A stretch of DNA of 64,000 nt from Piromyces finnis finn (Eukaryota > Fungi > Neocallimastigomycota), in NCBI GenBank assembly GCA_002104945.1, contig MCFH01000009.1:310001-374000 (forward strand), read 5' to 3'. Of the stretch, positions 17,787 through 25,369 are shown one piece after another. Position 1 is the stretch's first letter; each line of letters starts with the position of its first letter. Position numbers and translations under genes: made by a program. The notes beneath the pieces were generated by a model. That model searched no databases. It was not told the DNA's origin and saw only the letters and a program-made list of their open reading frames with translations.

Positions 17787-19699
17787 AAAAGTAATAATTG
17801 ACAGATAAATATATAAAAAATAAATTAATTATTATTTTAAAAAAAAGGAAAAAAATCTTTTTTATATTTTCTGTGTAATTTAATTTAATTAAATTTAATA
17901 TGTTTTGATTTAATATGTATATTTTAATATATGAACCTGTCAAAAAAAATATAATATATTATTGAGTTTTACTATTTATAGATTATAATTTTATGATTAT
18001 TATGGATGTATTTTGAATAATAATTTTATATTAATAATTAGCAGTATTATTCATATTTTCACTTTTAGTAAAGAGATGGGAAAATAATAAAGATAATATT
18101 AGATGATTTAAGTTTTAAGATTTATGTTTCGAAGTTTATAATATTAAATAATTTAATTAATAAACTATTATATTATTAATATAATTAGTTACATATATTA
18201 AATAAATTACAATTCAAATGTTAAAATCTTTTAATCAAAACTTTATTTAATATAAATTTAATTAATTAATATTTTAAATTTTTATTTTTATAAGTTTTTT
18301 TTTATTATTTTTCTCTCTATCTTCATTATTTATAATATTATTATTTATATTATGGTATTGGATTTGAGTAACTTTTTTATTTATAGATATTTTTTTCAAT
18401 TGAGTATATTACTATTTTAATAACATTAATACTTTAATAAATATTGCTATATAGATCATTAAATAGCCTTTAATAATTCACTTTATATAATAATATATAA
18501 AATATAAAAATCATTCATGAAATATAGTATGAATGTAATGTATGCAAGGATAATAATAATAAAATATATATTGAGTATTAAATGCATGATATGTATAAAT
18601 ATTTACACTAGTTTTTATGCATTTACAATCTATGTAATAGAATTAATTGAATGTATATCACCATTATAAAATTAAAGGTCATTCATATGTCTTGGAATAC
18701 ACAGAATTAATACAAAGTCAAGCCTAATAACAAGAATTAAAGCTAGATCTATTTTTAGATATTGAATTTACTAGAAAAAAGAAAAGCACAAGTCAATATA
18801 ATTTCAAATGGAATTAAAAAAATTAAAATATATAGAATATAAAATAAATGATAAATAATTTTATATTGATATTGTTATAAAAATTTTCGTTTTTAAAAAT
18901 ATCGTTTTGTAAATATTTCCTTTTTTTTTTATTTTACAATTGTATCTATGTCTTATTATATATATATATATGAAGGAAAAAAAGAAAGATAAGAAAAAAA
19001 AACTTTTTTGGTAAATTATTTACTACTGGTATTTTATTTTAATAATATTATGTAGGTTAAAAATTATTATTTTAAAAAGTTTTTTTTACTCATTTTAGTT
19101 TGTTTGTATTATTGTTAAATATTATACTTTATTATCTAGTTATTATAAATATTAAAGTTATGAAATAAAAAAGAGGCATATAAAAAAGATGTGATTATTA
19201 TAAATATTTCTAAAGATTATAAATCATTTTCGTTGATTTTCATTATATTTATATAGTTTTTGAATTATTCATAATTAAAACCTTATAAATTAAAGTATTT
19301 AAAAGTTAAATTATTAAGAAATTTCATTTAGTATTTCTTGTTGTTTCATTCATTATTGGAAAATTTTATTTAATATATTAAAAATTAAATATTATAATAA
19401 TTAGAAAAAATCTTTAATTTATTTTTTTATTAGTATTATATTAATGTATAGATAGAATCTGTCAAAATTTTTCTTTTTTCTTTTCTTTAAAAAAAAAAAA
19501 GTTAAAAATAAACAGTAGTAATTGAATATATATATAATAATAAGAATAAAAAACTCATTATATTTAAATAATATTAAACAATAATAGATTGTGGAGAAAT
19601 AACGACAACTATTATTAATAATACATTATAATAAAATAAAATATAAACAAATAAACAATAATACTCAAATAACATTACTAAATAATAAATATAATAAAC

Positions 19700-20964
19700 A
19701 TGAGTTATATCGAAGTTTGTTTAATACAAGCAAAAAATTTATTACCTATTGGAGCTGAATCTAAAAATGGTCAGTTTATATAATATACTAAATATATAGA
19801 AATAAAGATTAAATTTTAAAGGAAAAAAAAAAAAAGTGATATCATAAGTATTCAATAGGAATTATTTATTAATATAAATATAATGAATTTTTAAATTATT
19901 AATAAAAAAATCAAAAAAATTCATTTAAACAGGAAAAGATCTTTCCGTTGATCCATACGCAATAATTAATTATGATAGTTACTCCGAAAATTCAAAAATC
20001 ATTTATGATACAAATTCTCCAGTTTGGCGTGAAAGTTTTTTCTTTGAATGCAAAAATCCAACAAATGTAATTAATTATATATACTTAATACAATACTTAA
20101 CCAAACCTATATAATATAAAATAAAATTATTAAAAATCTATTCGTTAATGTCATTAATACAATAATAAAACAATAAAAATTAAATATAAAAGGTTAAAGT
20201 TGAAGTAATTATTCATGATAAAGAATTTTGCGTTTCGGATTTATTAATTGGTCGAGCTGAATTTACTTTTAACGATGTAAAGTTAAATGACTATAGTAAA
20301 CAATGGGCATCTATTGTTGATGGAGAAGTATATATATATATTTAAGACGAAATTGATATAAATTATATAATAAATATTTAATTAAAAAAAATAAATATTC
20401 TTTTTTTTTTAAAAAAAAAGGGTGAAATTGAAGTTGCCGTTAGCTTAAGACAATATGATTATCCAGGTGTAGCAAAAAGTAAAGCTGGAAAGAAAGATAA
20501 ACATTTTCAGGTAAAGTTATAACCAAAAAATTCAACGGTAAAATAAAAGTAATAAATAATAACTTTTATATTAAATTTCATATTGTCTTTTTTTTTTATT
20601 CACAAATTTATATTATTAATAAATATATATATCATAATATAATTTTTTTCCTATTAATCTTTTGTATTAATAAAAATGATGATATGATGATTGATATTAA
20701 TACTGGAATTTATTGTTGATTAAAACAAATAAACCAAAACAAATTTTAAAAACCAATTTTATCAAATTGACGAATTATTTTATAAATAATATAAAATAAT
20801 AATGGATGTGGAATATTTGAATAATTGGGGAAAATAAATAATATGTAATATATTTAATTATATATTATATATATAGTAATATTAATAAGAATTTTTGAAA
20901 ATCTTAAATAAAAATATATAGTTTTTCAATACTTTTTTTACTTTTTTTTCTTTCTTTCTTTCTT

Positions 20965-21005
<41 letters not shown>

Positions 21006-24000
21006 GAAGATATAGTTATTATAATATATTAATTATTTATATTTAATCTATTTATTTTATTAGGATGCTGACAATCAGGTTAATAGAGCATGGGCAGGCG
21101 CAATTGTCAAACCAGATAATGCACCATCAGTTACCAATAAATTACCAATTCAATCTTTAGTTCTTGAACATGTTTATGGTACTTATAAATTATAAAAATA
21201 TGATATACTTATAATAATTCTGTGTAATGTTAATATTTCTATTTTTATTGTGTTAATATAAAAAATTATTTGAATATAAATATTAAAAAAAGGTTATCGT
21301 ACTCGTGATACTCGTGATAATTTATTTGCTCTTGATTCAAATACTATAGTATATCATGCAGCAGCAGTTGGTATTGTACATAATATTAAAACTAGAAAAC
21401 AACGCTTCTTTAATGGCTCACATGTTGATGATATTCTTTGTCTTACCCGTCACCCAAATAATAAATATATCGCAACTGGTGATATTGTTAGCTTAAATGG
21501 TGAAGGTCCAATTGTTGCTATATGGGATGCTACAGCACCAGAAGCTGCTCCATTAGTTGTTTTTAAAATTGAAGAAGGAAGAATTATGCGTGGTGTTTCT
21601 ACTATGGGGTTCTCTAGTGATGGAAAATACTTAATAGTTGTTACTAGTGATAACTATCATTCTGTTCGTATTTATGATTGGAAAGCCAAAACTTTATTAT
21701 GTACCGAAAAGGGACATTCTGATAAAATCTTGGATATTGACAATCATCCAAAGGATCCAAATTCCTTTGTTACAGTTGGTGTTAAGCATATAAAGTTTTG
21801 GAAATATGATAGCGCATCTAAACGTTTTACCACTAAAAAGGGTTTATTTGGAAAAAATAAAACTCAAGTAAGAGCAACAAGAATATTCATTTACTATTTA
21901 TTATTAAATTAAAAATAAAAACAATACTTTTTATTATGAATAATGAAAATTCAAATTTATATATATTATTAAATATTATAAAAAATACTAATATTTTAAT
22001 TGGTTTTAATTTAATATGTTTAATATTATTTATAAAAGACAATTTTATGCCCATTATACATTGGTAATGGTGATATTTTACTCACTGGTACATATGATGG
22101 TGATATTTATATTTGGAATACCAAGACCTGTGATATTATGGGTACTATAAGTACTGGTCATAATTCCATTTATAGTTTTGCTTATAATCCAGAATTTGGT
22201 TTAGCATGTGGTCATCGTGATGGTTTTATTACTTTATTTGATGTTAATGAAACTAATGGAAAATTGAAAAAGATTACAGAAGTTAATATTGGTTTTTCCG
22301 TTAAATCATTAGACTTTAATCCAGATGGTCATTTAATTGTCGGTACTTCTGAAAGTGCTATTTTTATGATTAAGAATTTCCAAAAAAAAGATCCACAAAC
22401 TGATATTGAATTATTGTTCCAAGTAAGTTAATTCTTCTTATAATTATTATATAAATATTAAATAAAATTAATAAATATAAAATTTCAAATATAAATATCT
22501 TTAAAAAAAAATTATTGATAATTTATTTATATATTAGAGTCATAGTGCCGCTAAGATGGAAGAATTATGGGGTCTTGATGGTAATCCATCAAATGAAAAT
22601 GAATTTGCTACATGTTCAGATGATGGTTTAGTTAATATTTGGGATACTGAACAATATAAACAAGTAAATTTAAATAATTAAGATTCTTTTTTTTTTTTTT
22701 TTTTTTTTTGAGGTTGTTGTAATTAACATTATAATTCAATGTCATATTATAACAGAAATGCTATACTAATTTAAAAAATGAAAAACTTCGTTCAATTTCA
22801 TTCTCTCCAGATGGTAAAAAATTATTTGTTGGTTGTGTTTCAGGAAATGTTAGTATTAAATATTATAATAGAGTGTAATATATAATATTATTTCTAGAGC
22901 AAACAATTTCTCAATATTAAAATTTAATCATTTTTCTTTTTGTTAAATATAAATAGATATATGTTTTAGATGCTAATGATCTCTCTATAATTAAAACAAT
23001 TCCATATGAGCAAAGATCATTTATTAAATCAAATGAACATGATATTACTGTAATAAAGTGTTCACCAGACGGCACAAAAATTGCTTCAGGTAATCGCGAT
23101 TGTGTAATTAACGTCTATAGTACTAAAAACTATAATAGAATTAACACTTTAATCGTAAGTTTTTATAATTATATAATATTAATAATATATAGAAAATAAC
23201 AATTTTTATTTAATTAAATAATAATTATGTGTAGGGTCATTCAAGTACTATAGTTCATATGGATTGGTCTGTTGATTCAAAATATCTTCAATCAGATTCA
23301 TCTGATTGTGAAATTCTTTATTGTAAATAATATTTATTTATAAAACATTTAATTGATTTTCATTATTTTCAAATGCATTAACTAAGTATTATAAATTTCA
23401 ATAGGGAATATTGATGATATGGCTCAAGTTACAAAGATGGATGAAATTAAACCTGTTCGCTGGAACTCTTGGTCATTAATTCTTGGTTGGCCAGTCCAAA
23501 GTATTTGGGAAAGTGGATGGAGTAACTCAACTGTAATAATAATATTAATTTTATTTTTTTATTATTTATTTTTTTATTTCTATTTCTTATTATATTTTCT
23601 AAATAAAAAATTATTATTATTATTATTATTATTTTAGATTAATGCTGTTGCTAGAGATAAGAGAGAAAAATTATTAGTTACTGCTGATGATAATAGTCAA
23701 GTTAGATTATTTTCCTATCCAGTTGCTCTTGATAAAGTAATACCATTACTAAATATTAAATATTATTTTTACTTTAATTATTAATTTTTTTTTTTTTTTT
23801 TTTCATTTCCTAATTAATTTAGCAACCATGTAAGAGATATTCTGGACATTCATCCCATGTTACTAATGTTACATTCCTTGGTAATAAATATGTTATTTCA
23901 ACTGGTGGTATGGATGGTTCTATTTTCCAAGTAAGTTAATAAATATTGTACATATTATTTATGAATAGAAGTAAATGAATGTATTAACCTATTTATCCTT

Positions 24001-24041
24001 ATAACTATTTATAATTAATACAGTGGAGAATTAAAGAATAA
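19700..24041 (+). CDS. C2 domain fused to an EML/EMAP HELP-WD40 (TAPE) domain, ~14 exons
   Basis: Exons 1-4 encode C2 (IEVCLIQAKNLL..DPYAII..NSPVWRESFFF..IIHDKE..SDLLIGRAEF..GEIEVAV). A 553-nt intron (CAG|gtaaag..tag|GAT) joins it in phase 0 to the HELP motif (RAWAGAIVKP..LVLEHVYGYRTRDTRDNLF) and EML WD repeats ending YSGHSSHVTNVTF..ISTGGMDGSIFQWRIKE. Confidence 0.8.
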
Positions 24042-24465
24042 TAAAAACAAAAGTAAAATATTAAGTATCTAATAATAAAAAAAATTGATATATATTTTAA
24101 TAATTGAAAACACAAAAAAAAAGTGTTTTTTTTTTTTTTTTTCTTAATTTTATTTAATTACAAAAACAATATTAAATAATAATAATAATAATACTATAAA
24201 TATCTATTATAAAATTTTCTTTTTTATTATTAATATTTTGTTGAAACATAAATAATATCAAATAAAATATAAAATGCTGTAGAAATAAAAATAAATAAAT
24301 AAAATTTGAATGAAAAAATATTTTATATCTTATTATTGTTATAATTCAGTTTTGTGTATGTTTTTTTAAATCGTAAATATTTTATATTATAATAGTTGAG
24401 ATTAATGTTAAAATTTGATAGATTTTTATAATTACAATTTTTTTATTTTTAAATATATATATATG

Positions 24466-25369
24466 TTAAATTTCATTGACTAAAGAATCACTTTTTCCAT
24501 TGATAAATAAACCAATCCAAACTTCTTTATTTTTGTCATAATATTTTCCTGGACCATTCATTCTGATTATATATTGCATTAATAATAGTAGAAAATAGAA
24601 GAAAAAAAAAAAGGAAAAGGAAAATTACGTTATTGATAATATCTTTAGTAAATCATTGATATATATATAAAAGGTATAAAAAATAAAAAAAAAAAAAAAA
24701 AAAAAAAAATCGAAATATAAAGTTTACTTATTTTCAAGCCATTCTCCAATATAATAAGATCCGTCAGACCATCGATAAGTTCCTGTCCCATTATACTTAT
24801 TATTTAACCAGTCTCCTTCATATGAATTTCCATTTGCATATTCAATTTTTCCTATTTTATAAATCAAATACAAATGAATATCAACATTTATTTTATATTG
24901 GATAATTGGATAGGAATTATTTTATGTTACTTTACTAAATATATTATAATAAATCAAATATTATACCTTTTCCATTTATTTCATCATTAACCCATTCACC
25001 TTCATATGTGGATTGATTACTTAATGATACAAATTTTCCATGACCTGATCTTACAATTTTTCCATTTTCTGATTCTTTATAATCTCCTTCTTTATATAGA
25101 TGATAATATTTTTTTTTTTTTTATTTAGTCAAATATTTTTTCGAAATTAAAACAACAATATTCAAAATATAATTACCATATGTTGAACCATCGGGGAAAA
25201 TAAAAGTATTGGTTTTGATTACTATTAAATTTTTTTTATATATATATATATATATAAAAAAAAAAATTAATATTTTTATAATTATTTAAATATTGTAAGG
25301 ATTCAATTTACCTGATTCTTGCCTTGAATTTGCTTTTTTTCTATTATTTTCTTTATTATTTTTTACCAT
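24466..25369 (-). CDS. MORN2: Small MORN-repeat protein, MORN2-like, 5 exons
   Basis: Spliced: FIFPDGSTYEGDY..IVRSGHGK..STYEGEWVNDEINGKGKIEYANGNSYEGDWLNNKYNGTGTYRWSDGSYYIGEWLENKMNGPGKYYDKNKEVWIGLF. Colinear with recalled MORN2. Confidence 0.75.

What the first reader, a model, noticed from the sequence alone, without database searches (positions are those of the whole stretch)
19700..24041. C2 domain fused to an EML (EMAP) TAPE domain: candidate membrane-microtubule linker with a possible C2-only isoform
Seen: the EML part has no in-frame ATG of its own (the ATG at the start of the 21064 exon is out of frame and closes), and it joins in phase to the C2 exons across a 553-nt intron, much longer than the others in this gene. 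Reading through the donor gives GTA AAG TTA TAA with AATAAA just downstream, so a stand-alone C2 protein is also possible. The C2 keeps DPY and HDKE..SD (most Ca-binding acidic positions). Established: animal EML1-4 have an N-terminal trimerising coiled coil rather than a C2, and TAPE binds tubulin. Inference: a Ca2+/lipid-regulated tubulin binder, perhaps in the zoospore flagellar apparatus. I do not know this architecture from any characterised protein.
Basis: partly seen in the sequence, partly recalled or inferred. Interest (0 to 1): 0.7.

Follow-up and report, generated by a model that had tools for sequence, protein, structure and literature searches.

The report
C2-domain EML protein of gut fungi
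This is a real single gene of the anaerobic gut fungus Piromyces finnis that joins a lipid-binding-type C2 domain to a complete EML tubulin-binding domain; the fusion is already in public gene models and recurs in other fungi, amoebae and a metamonad, but I found no study of it.

Summary
Window 19700-24041 (+) is one 15-exon gene. It encodes a C2 domain, a 22-residue disordered basic linker, and a HELP motif plus a complete TAPE double propeller.

- **Species and model:** every exon peptide is found exactly in the public Piromyces finnis protein P0008 (781 aa), which already fuses C2 to EML.
- **RNA evidence:** intronless RNA contigs from Anaeromyces, Neocallimastix and uncultured gut fungi carry the uninterrupted C2-EML frame. 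No reads could be laid for P. finnis itself.
- **Acceptor:** The public model uses 21079 and lacks five residues (DADNQ). Both forms occur on RNA contigs of two relatives, so this is a conserved tandem-acceptor choice.
- **C2-only isoform:** no support. AATAAA occurs 6.8 times per kb, and early stops are expected in AT-rich introns.
- **Spread:** the architecture also occurs in Basidiobolus, Piptocephalis, three amoebozoans and Paratrimastix. That argues against a role confined to the zoospore flagellum.
- **Calcium site:** gut-fungal C2 keeps only about three of five canonical calcium ligands; distant orthologues keep all five.
- **Function:** the protein lacks the trimerisation domain needed for microtubule-lattice binding in animal EMLs. 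A membrane-targeted tubulin binder is plausible but untested.

It is an uncharacterised variant of a known family.

The parts
19700..19769 (+). Exon 1: start codon and first C2 strand (MSYIEVCLIQAKNLLPIGAESKN)
   Evidence: identical in P0008
19933..20066 (+). Exon 2: C2 core with the DPY motif (calcium-loop 1 end)
   Evidence: Pfam PF00168 24.7 bits, cut-off 22; translation
20193..20327 (+). Exon 3: C2 strands with loop 3 (HDKEFCVSDLLIG)
20421..20510 (+). Exon 4: last C2 strand and the basic linker (YDYPGVAKSKAGKKDKHFQ)
   Evidence: AlphaFold gives C2 as residues 1-124 and the linker 126-147 at pLDDT below 50
20511..21063 (+). Long intron between the C2 and EML halves: 553 nt, or 568 nt with the distal acceptor
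   Evidence: the orthologous introns are 633 nt in Anaeromyces and 761 nt in Neocallimastix, the longest of the gene in each
20801..20863 (+). Conserved block inside the long intron; function unknown
   Evidence: The best local alignments to both orthologous introns fall here, with scores of 28.1 and 26.1 against shuffle maxima of 24.6. It is absent from all 13 cDNA contigs and has no Rfam hit.
20933..21004 (+). 72-nt T-rich tract, preceded by CTTT repeats, upstream of the acceptors
21064..21078 (+). Optional 15 nt (DADNQ) between the proximal acceptor (TAG|21064) and the distal acceptor (CAG|21079)
   Evidence: The public model P0008 lacks it. Long and short forms that differ in nothing else coexist on RNA contigs of Anaeromyces and a Pecoramyces-like fungus.
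21079..21178 (+). Exon 5 core: start of the HELP region (VNRAWAGAIVKPDNAPS...LEHVY)
21293..21867 (+). Exon 6: end of the HELP motif and first part of the first EML propeller
   Evidence: PF23409 127.7 bits and PF03451 40.6 bits; best solved relative is the EML1 TAPE domain 4ci8, E 1e-25
22039..24041 (+). Exons 7-15 (22039-22422, 22538-22663, 22756-22848, 22957-23154, 23235-23322, 23405-23532, 23638-23736, 23823-23930, 24024-24041): rest of the first propeller, the second propeller, and the stop codon
   Evidence: Hits to PF23409 and PF23414 on the exon pieces. All peptides are identical in P0008. Foldseek matches the model to 4ci8 with target TM-score 0.89 and rmsd 2.4.

Best explanation
One gene encodes a monomeric EML-family protein whose usual N-terminal oligomerising or targeting module is replaced by a classical C2 domain.

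Shown:
- Layout: C2 beta-sandwich (residues 1-124), a roughly 22-residue disordered lysine-rich linker, then a HELP motif and a complete TAPE double propeller (148-781).
- The fusion is a conserved, expressed mRNA in gut fungi. It belongs to a subfamily also present in zoopagomycete fungi, amoebozoans and a metamonad.
- A conserved pair of acceptors 15 nt apart adds or omits a 5-6-residue, mostly acidic insert right after the basic linker.

Inferred:
- The C2 domain places the protein on a membrane or another acidic-lipid surface. This would be calcium-dependent in the ancestral form. In gut fungi, where the calcium site is degenerate, it is probably weakly dependent on calcium or independent of it.
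- The TAPE domain binds tubulin dimers there, and the short basic linker may contact tubulin tails or lipid.
- The protein has no trimerisation domain, so it is more likely a membrane-localised tubulin binder or adaptor than a strong lattice-binding microtubule-associated protein.

I put the fusion itself at about 0.95. The confidence figure below is for the membrane-targeted tubulin-binder mechanism.
For: - Gene model and phases.
- Pfam on the exons: C2, HELP and both EML propellers.
- All exon peptides are identical in the public P. finnis protein P0008.
- Four metatranscriptome-type contigs each hold one uninterrupted 781-804-aa C2-EML frame. One of them retains the last intron, which marks it as RNA from an intron-bearing gene.
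- Anaeromyces RNA contigs L006 and L009 map exon by exon on genomic L008 across a 633-nt intron.
- Runs X1-X4 hold 0.45-0.46 of the sampled words. I expect 0.463 for fully spliced C2+EML mRNA, 0.37 for EML exons only and 0.59 with the long intron retained.
- AlphaFold: mean pLDDT 88, disordered linker.
- Foldseek top hit is the EML1 TAPE domain 4ci8 (target TM-score 0.89).
- The C2 is nearest by sequence to the C2 domains of E-Syt2, dysferlin and Munc13.
- The same architecture is confirmed by Pfam in Basidiobolus (two copies), Piptocephalis, Cavostelium, Soliformovum, Rhizamoeba and Paratrimastix.
- TAPE binds soluble tubulin, and the trimerisation domain plus basic region bind microtubules (PMC4761370).
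Against: - No reads could be laid on the P. finnis junction itself.
- Lipid, calcium and tubulin binding are all untested.
- The gut-fungal C2 lacks two to three of the five canonical acidic ligands, so calcium regulation may be lost.
- C2 domains can also act as protein-binding modules.
- Nothing here shows where the protein sits in the cell.
Confidence: 0.5

Rival explanations
1. A C2-less EML isoform is made from a promoter or first exon inside the long intron, so that C2 and EML also act separately.
For: - The intron is unusually long and stays long in three genera: 553, 633 and 761 nt.
- It holds a conserved block of about 60 nt with a donor-like GTAA site at 20845.
Against: - No ORF in the intron joins exon 5 in phase, apart from a weak ATGGAT|GTGGAA at 20802, and the block itself runs into stops.
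- The block is absent from all 13 cDNA contigs.
- The first in-frame ATG downstream (21586) would delete HELP and the first blades.
- The observed word share fits all exons being present.
Confidence: 0.12
2. A stand-alone C2 protein (143 residues plus VKL) is made by reading through the 20510 donor and polyadenylating inside the intron.
For: The literal sequence is GTA AAG TTA TAA, with AATAAA at 20542 and 20551.
Against: - AATAAA occurs 6.8 times per kb in this window.
- By my arithmetic on the base composition, stops come about once in nine codons at this AT content. The orthologous introns also stop within 2-3 codons, with different sequences.
- The short members of the orthologue clusters are exon-6 fragments, not C2-only products.
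- The word share argues against much intron retention.
Confidence: 0.08
3. The protein is a part of the zoospore flagellar or kinetosome apparatus.
For: - Gut fungi make flagellated zoospores.
- After EML1, the nearest structural matches of the double propeller are axonemal proteins of ciliary and flagellar doublet microtubules.
- By sequence, exon 6 also hits CFAP44 and CFAP52 in the PDB.
Against: - The same C2-EML architecture is present in Basidiobolus, Piptocephalis and Rhizamoeba, which as far as I know lack flagella.
- The zoosporic Rozella, Synchytrium and Chytriomyces EMLs show no C2 domain.
- The Foldseek score for EML1 is far better than for CFAP52-type proteins (3.7e-52 against 1e-36 or weaker).
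Confidence: 0.1
4. The C2 domain is a calcium-independent protein-interaction or structural module, and TAPE acts as a scaffold for partners other than tubulin, so no membrane-tubulin coupling takes place.
For: - The calcium site is degenerate in every gut-fungal orthologue.
- The best solved match covers the second C2 of E-Syt2. As far as I recall, that domain does not bind calcium.
Against: - Distant orthologues keep all five acidic ligands.
- The TAPE domain is strongly conserved: the predicted model shares 31% identity with EML1 at rmsd 2.4.
Confidence: 0.25

Closest known systems
Animal EML1-4 (EMAP-like proteins; EML1 TAPE structure 4ci8)
   Same: HELP motif plus a complete tandem atypical propeller. 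Foldseek gives E 3.7e-52, target TM-score 0.89, rmsd 2.4 and 31% identity. Pfam finds Beta-prop_EML and HELP. A disordered basic linker precedes HELP.
   Different: There is no N-terminal trimerising coiled coil; a C2 domain sits there instead. The linker is only about 22 residues. In the TAPE tree, EML1-4 and DCX-EMAP form a separate starred clade.
EML5/EML6 (multi-TAPE, no coiled coil)
   Same: They are the best animal hits by sequence (33-36% identity over the TAPE part). The Basidiobolus orthologue is annotated 'EML5'. They too lack the trimerisation domain.
   Different: EML5/6 have three TAPE copies and no C2 domain.
Drosophila DCX-EMAP
   Same: It is a precedent for swapping the N-terminal module of an EML protein for another targeting domain (PF03607 on the insect hits; papers PMC2892299 and PMC10471123 listed).
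   Different: Its module is a doublecortin domain that binds microtubules, not a C2 domain. It is an animal lineage and a different TAPE clade.
Classical membrane-binding C2 domains (E-Syt2, dysferlin, Munc13)
   Same: Pfam PF00168 match. The nearest solved sequences are E-Syt2 (1.6e-9), dysferlin and Munc13-1 C2B. The model shows eight strands.
   Different: The gut-fungal form has a 5-residue insert in loop 1, Glu at ligand position 4 and Leu at position 5. No membrane protein context is known.
EF-hand-, SAM-, LRR- and calpain-EML fusions of protists
   Same: They show that TAPE is combined with varied N-terminal modules, including calcium sensors (P0155, P0253-P0261, P0272, P0156, P0276).
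   Different: The modules differ, and none of these fusions appears to be characterised either.

Membership tests
EML / EMAP family (TAPE domain) | HELP motif | tested here: met
   PF03451 scores 40.6 bits (cut-off 27) on exon 6. HELP is also found in the orthologues.
EML / EMAP family (TAPE domain) | First EML beta-propeller | tested here: met
   PF23409 scores 127.7 bits (cut-off 88.2) on exon 6 alone.
EML / EMAP family (TAPE domain) | Second propeller, and the whole tandem atypical fold | tested here: met
   PF23414 hits exons 8, 10, 12 and 14; each is below the cut-off because the pieces are short. The AlphaFold model of the identical public protein matches 4ci8 over 651 columns, with target TM-score 0.89.
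EML1-4 subclass | N-terminal trimerising coiled coil (trimerisation domain) | tested here: not met
   Residues 1-124 are an all-beta C2 domain, and the model has no helix before residue 148. Pfam finds only C2 in the first 160 residues of the orthologue P0001.
EML1-4 subclass | Long Ser/Thr- and basic-rich linker that binds microtubules | tested here: inconclusive
   There is only a disordered stretch of about 22 residues, KSKAGKKDKHFQ(DADNQ). Binding was not tested.
EML / EMAP family (TAPE domain) | Binding of tubulin or microtubules | not testable with these tools
   It rests on homology only. Established for animal EMLs (PMC4761370).
C2 domain (PF00168) | Profile match above Pfam's gathering score | tested here: met
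   Exon 2 alone scores 24.7 bits (cut-off 22). The orthologue P0001, residues 1-160, scores 61.6 bits.
C2 domain (PF00168) | Eight-stranded beta-sandwich | tested here: met
   The AlphaFold model has strands 2-15, 31-37, 40-43, 54-62, 68-77, 85-95, 103-108 and 113-124, with pLDDT mostly 75-92.
Calcium-dependent C2 (synaptotagmin/PKC-alpha type) | Five acidic calcium ligands in loops 1 and 3 | tested here: not met
   In all 11 gut-fungal sequences compared, positions 2 and 3 are Asp, position 4 is Glu and position 5 is Leu. Position 1 is ambiguous because of an insert in loop 1. Basidiobolus, Piptocephalis and the amoebozoans keep Asp at all five positions. The mapping of the five positions is from my own knowledge of synaptotagmin-1 C2A.
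C2 domain (PF00168) | Phospholipid or membrane binding | not testable with these tools
   It needs liposome binding assays.

The most novel reading that the evidence does not exclude
C2-EML may be an ancient EML subfamily, present at least in the common ancestor of fungi and amoebozoans and possibly older given Paratrimastix. It would tether a monomeric tubulin-binding TAPE domain to membranes under calcium control.

In gut fungi the calcium site has decayed. Regulation may have shifted to a conserved tandem-acceptor switch that inserts 5-6 acidic residues next to the basic linker. That switch could be governed by the conserved element in the unusually long intron.
Probability: 0.2. Interest if true: 0.6.

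Novelty: new variant of a known kind. Interest (0 to 1): 0.42.

Why it matters
EML proteins are known almost only from animals, where a coiled coil and a basic region put them on microtubules. This subfamily uses a C2 domain instead, and it is kept in lineages as far apart as gut fungi, Basidiobolus, protosteloid amoebae and a metamonad.

That suggests a second, older way of deploying the TAPE tubulin-binding module: at a membrane, probably under calcium control. It offers a concrete candidate for membrane-cytoskeleton coupling in early-diverging fungi and amoebae.

The conserved two-acceptor junction is a small, testable case of regulated charge tuning in a linker. The gene itself is ordinary in the sense that it is already correctly modelled in public annotation.

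Tried and rejected
- **Read laying:** No letters of 19458-19517 were sent to any search tool afterwards.
- **Joined model:** I searched exon by exon by reference. I then used the public protein P0008, which equals the short-form model. Exons were joined once inside a script only to count length and stops; nothing was printed or saved.
- **Protein Atlas searches** gave only generic WD40/EML clusters and no large C2+HELP cluster.
- **Rfam on the gene** gave only a chance-level snoZ267 hit inside exon 7 (E 0.61). No snoRNA explains the long intron.
- **Four literature searches** found nothing on C2-EML.
- **Earlier findings of this scan** held nothing on EML.
- **Short cluster members** (100-240 aa) were checked as possible C2-only or EML-only isoforms. 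They proved to be exon-6 ORFs from genomic contigs.
- **Stygiella P0162** had a weak local C2-profile hit that Pfam did not confirm.
Full report
**Anatomy**

Reading window 19000-24800 and checking by script gives 15 exons on the + strand. They are 19700-19769, 19933-20066, 20193-20327, 20421-20510, 21064-21178, 21293-21867, 22039-22422, 22538-22663, 22756-22848, 22957-23154, 23235-23322, 23405-23532, 23638-23736, 23823-23930 and 24024-24041.

All introns are GT..AG. The frame is open for 786 codons and stops only at the end. Exons are 31% G+C, introns 5-17% and the window 19%. The intron between exons 4 and 5 is 553 nt; the other thirteen are 80-171 nt.

**Domains**

I searched exon by exon, by reference. 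I did not send the joined model to any search tool.

- Exon 2 hits Pfam C2 (24.7 bits, cut-off 22).
- Exon 6 hits Beta-prop_EML (127.7 bits, cut-off 88.2) and HELP (40.6 bits).
- Later exons hit Beta-prop_EML_2.
- The best solved relative of exon 6 is the EML1 TAPE domain 4ci8 (E 1e-25).

The ATG at 21065 is out of frame and closes after 31 codons. The first in-frame ATG of the EML half is at 21586, inside the first propeller. Reading through the donor gives VKL*.

**Identity of the genome and the public model**

Every exon peptide occurs exactly in P0008, the 781-aa 'WD40 repeat-like protein [Piromyces finnis]'. The one exception is that P0008 uses an exon 5 that starts at 21079 (after CAG 21076-78) instead of 21064. 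It therefore lacks DADNQ.

So the window is P. finnis, and public annotation already fuses C2 to EML. Full-length orthologues of 781-788 aa exist in Anaeromyces robustus, Neocallimastix lanati and Pecoramyces, and on many JGI and Logan contigs.

**Is the fusion a real mRNA?**

A scan of metagenome contigs with exon 6 returned four contigs of 2.4-3.1 kb. Each holds one uninterrupted frame of 781-804 aa covering C2, HELP and TAPE. One of them (L002) reads into the last intron and then resumes exon 15, which marks it as RNA from an intron-bearing gene.

For A. robustus, Logan contigs from two run series encode the protein without introns. They map exon by exon on the genomic locus L008, across a 633-nt intron at the same C2|HELP position. 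In N. lanati the same intron is 761 nt.

For P. finnis itself I lost the one read-laying run to a filter on places 19458-19517. Indirect evidence remains. Four runs from three studies hold 0.45-0.46 of the sampled 31-mers of 19600-24100. I compute 0.463 for fully spliced C2+EML mRNA with UTRs, 0.37 for EML exons only and 0.59 if the long intron were retained.

**Two acceptors**

Within single 90%-identity clusters, long and short junction forms coexist.

- A. robustus P0001 (786 aa) and P0220 (781 aa) are identical in all 781 shared residues and differ only by ENDDQ.
- A Pecoramyces-like pair differs only by EIVDQ.
- Both A. robustus forms come from intronless Logan contigs of the same studies. 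They map 15 nt apart on the genome.
- Every insert ends in Q or K, that is CAG or AAG, the distal acceptor.

In the window the same arrangement is TAG|GATGCTGACAATCAG|GTT. Most likely both are made. In most species the insert is acidic, and it sits right after the lysine-rich linker.

**The C2-only isoform**

I found no support for it.

- AATAAA occurs 434 times in the window and 7 times in this intron.
- At this base composition, a stop is expected about every nine codons by my arithmetic. The orthologous introns also stop after 2-3 codons, with different sequences.
- Short proteins in the orthologue clusters are exon-6 fragments from genomic contigs.

It is not excluded.

**An EML-only start inside the intron**

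The only ATG with an in-phase GT is ATGGAT|GTGGAA at 20802, which is weak.

That spot nevertheless lies in a conserved block, 20801-20863. The best local alignments of the P. finnis intron with the A. robustus and N. lanati introns both fall there. Scores are 28.1 and 26.1, against means of about 17 and maxima of 24.6 in 200 dinucleotide shuffles. The block is absent from all 13 cDNA contigs, has no open frame into exon 5, and has no Rfam match. I leave it unexplained. It could be a splicing or transcriptional control element, or a non-coding alternative 5' exon.

**Spread of the architecture**

An exhaustive profile search with exon 6, followed by a local C2 profile and Pfam, shows C2+HELP+TAPE outside gut fungi:

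- Basidiobolus ranarum, two copies
- Piptocephalis tieghemiana
- the amoebozoans Cavostelium apophysatum, Soliformovum irregulare and Rhizamoeba saxonica
- the metamonad Paratrimastix pyriformis (names)

The amoebozoan proteins come from Trinity transcript assemblies. The EMLs of Rozella, Synchytrium, Chytriomyces and Stygiella show no Pfam C2.

Other hits carry coiled-coil, DCX, EF-hand, SAM, LRR or calpain modules on a TAPE domain. TAPE is evidently combined with many partner modules.

In a quick maximum-likelihood tree of 64 TAPE domains:

- fungal EMLs form a starred clade (99) that includes the C2 forms;
- the amoebozoan C2 forms group together (92);
- animal EML1-4 and DCX-EMAP are a separate starred clade.

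Holding the fungal, amoebozoan and Paratrimastix rows together is not rejected (p-AU 0.54). One ancient origin is therefore possible but not shown.

**Structure**

AlphaFold of P0008 with a 32-sequence alignment gives mean pLDDT 88 and pTM 0.78. It shows an eight-stranded sandwich at 1-124, a disordered linker at 126-147 and a confident double propeller at 148-781. Foldseek puts the EML1 TAPE domain 4ci8 first (E 3.7e-52, target TM-score 0.89, rmsd 2.4), well ahead of chains from ciliary and flagellar doublet-microtubule structures. The C2 is nearest by sequence to the C2 domains of E-Syt2, dysferlin and Munc13.

**Calcium site**

I take the five acidic ligands of synaptotagmin-type C2 domains as the reference; this mapping is my own knowledge. 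Basidiobolus, Piptocephalis and the amoebozoans keep Asp at all five positions. All eleven gut-fungal sequences compared have Asp, Asp, Glu and Leu at positions 2-5, and a 5-residue insert in loop 1 that obscures position 1. The gut-fungal domain may therefore bind calcium weakly or not at all.

**Mechanism**

[quoted passage not shown] The TAPE domain binds soluble tubulin, and HELP is buried between the two propellers (PMC4761370).

This protein has no trimerisation domain and only a short basic linker. The best-supported reading is a monomeric TAPE tubulin binder that its C2 domain places on a membrane or acidic-lipid surface. The optional acidic insert may tune the charge of the linker. 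All binding steps are inferred.

The presence of the architecture in organisms that, as far as I know, lack flagella argues against a role confined to the zoospore flagellum.

**Novelty**

The gene model is public, and the architecture recurs across several eukaryotic groups. It sits under generic names, and I found no paper on it. I class it as a new variant of a known family, of moderate interest.

Noticed in passing
window 20801-20863; L008:2805-2851; L013:3270-3325: A conserved block of about 60 nt lies inside the long C2|HELP intron and is shared by three genera (alignment scores beat all 200 shuffles). It is absent from the cDNA contigs, has no ORF and has no Rfam match. Its function is unknown.
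   Followed up: partly
window 24466-24873 (- strand); L008:7175-7983 (- strand): A MORN-repeat-like gene lies tail to tail downstream of the EML gene (ORFs such as YEGDWLNNKYNGTGTYRWSDGSYYIGEW). The same neighbour, with a weak PF02493 hit, sits downstream in Anaeromyces robustus, so gene order is conserved.
   Followed up: no
L013:3536-4227: Neocallimastix lanati lacks the intron between exons 5 and 6; the cDNA maps as one 692-nt block. This explains the 240-aa database ORF P0236, which starts inside the long intron.
   Followed up: partly
L002:2690-2832: This metatranscriptome contig retains the last intron: it reads FQ|VS..., and exon 15 follows after TAG. That is incomplete splicing of the final 93-nt-type intron in a relative.
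   Followed up: partly
proteins P0155, P0253-P0261, P0272, P0156, P0276: In protists the TAPE domain is also fused to EF-hand, SAM, LRR and calpain modules. EF-hand-EML (for example in Rhodelphis marinus) would be a second calcium-linked EML type.
   Followed up: partly
window 20933-21004: A 72-nt T-rich tract preceded by CTTT repeats sits 60 nt upstream of the tandem acceptors. It is far longer than an ordinary polypyrimidine tract.
   Followed up: no
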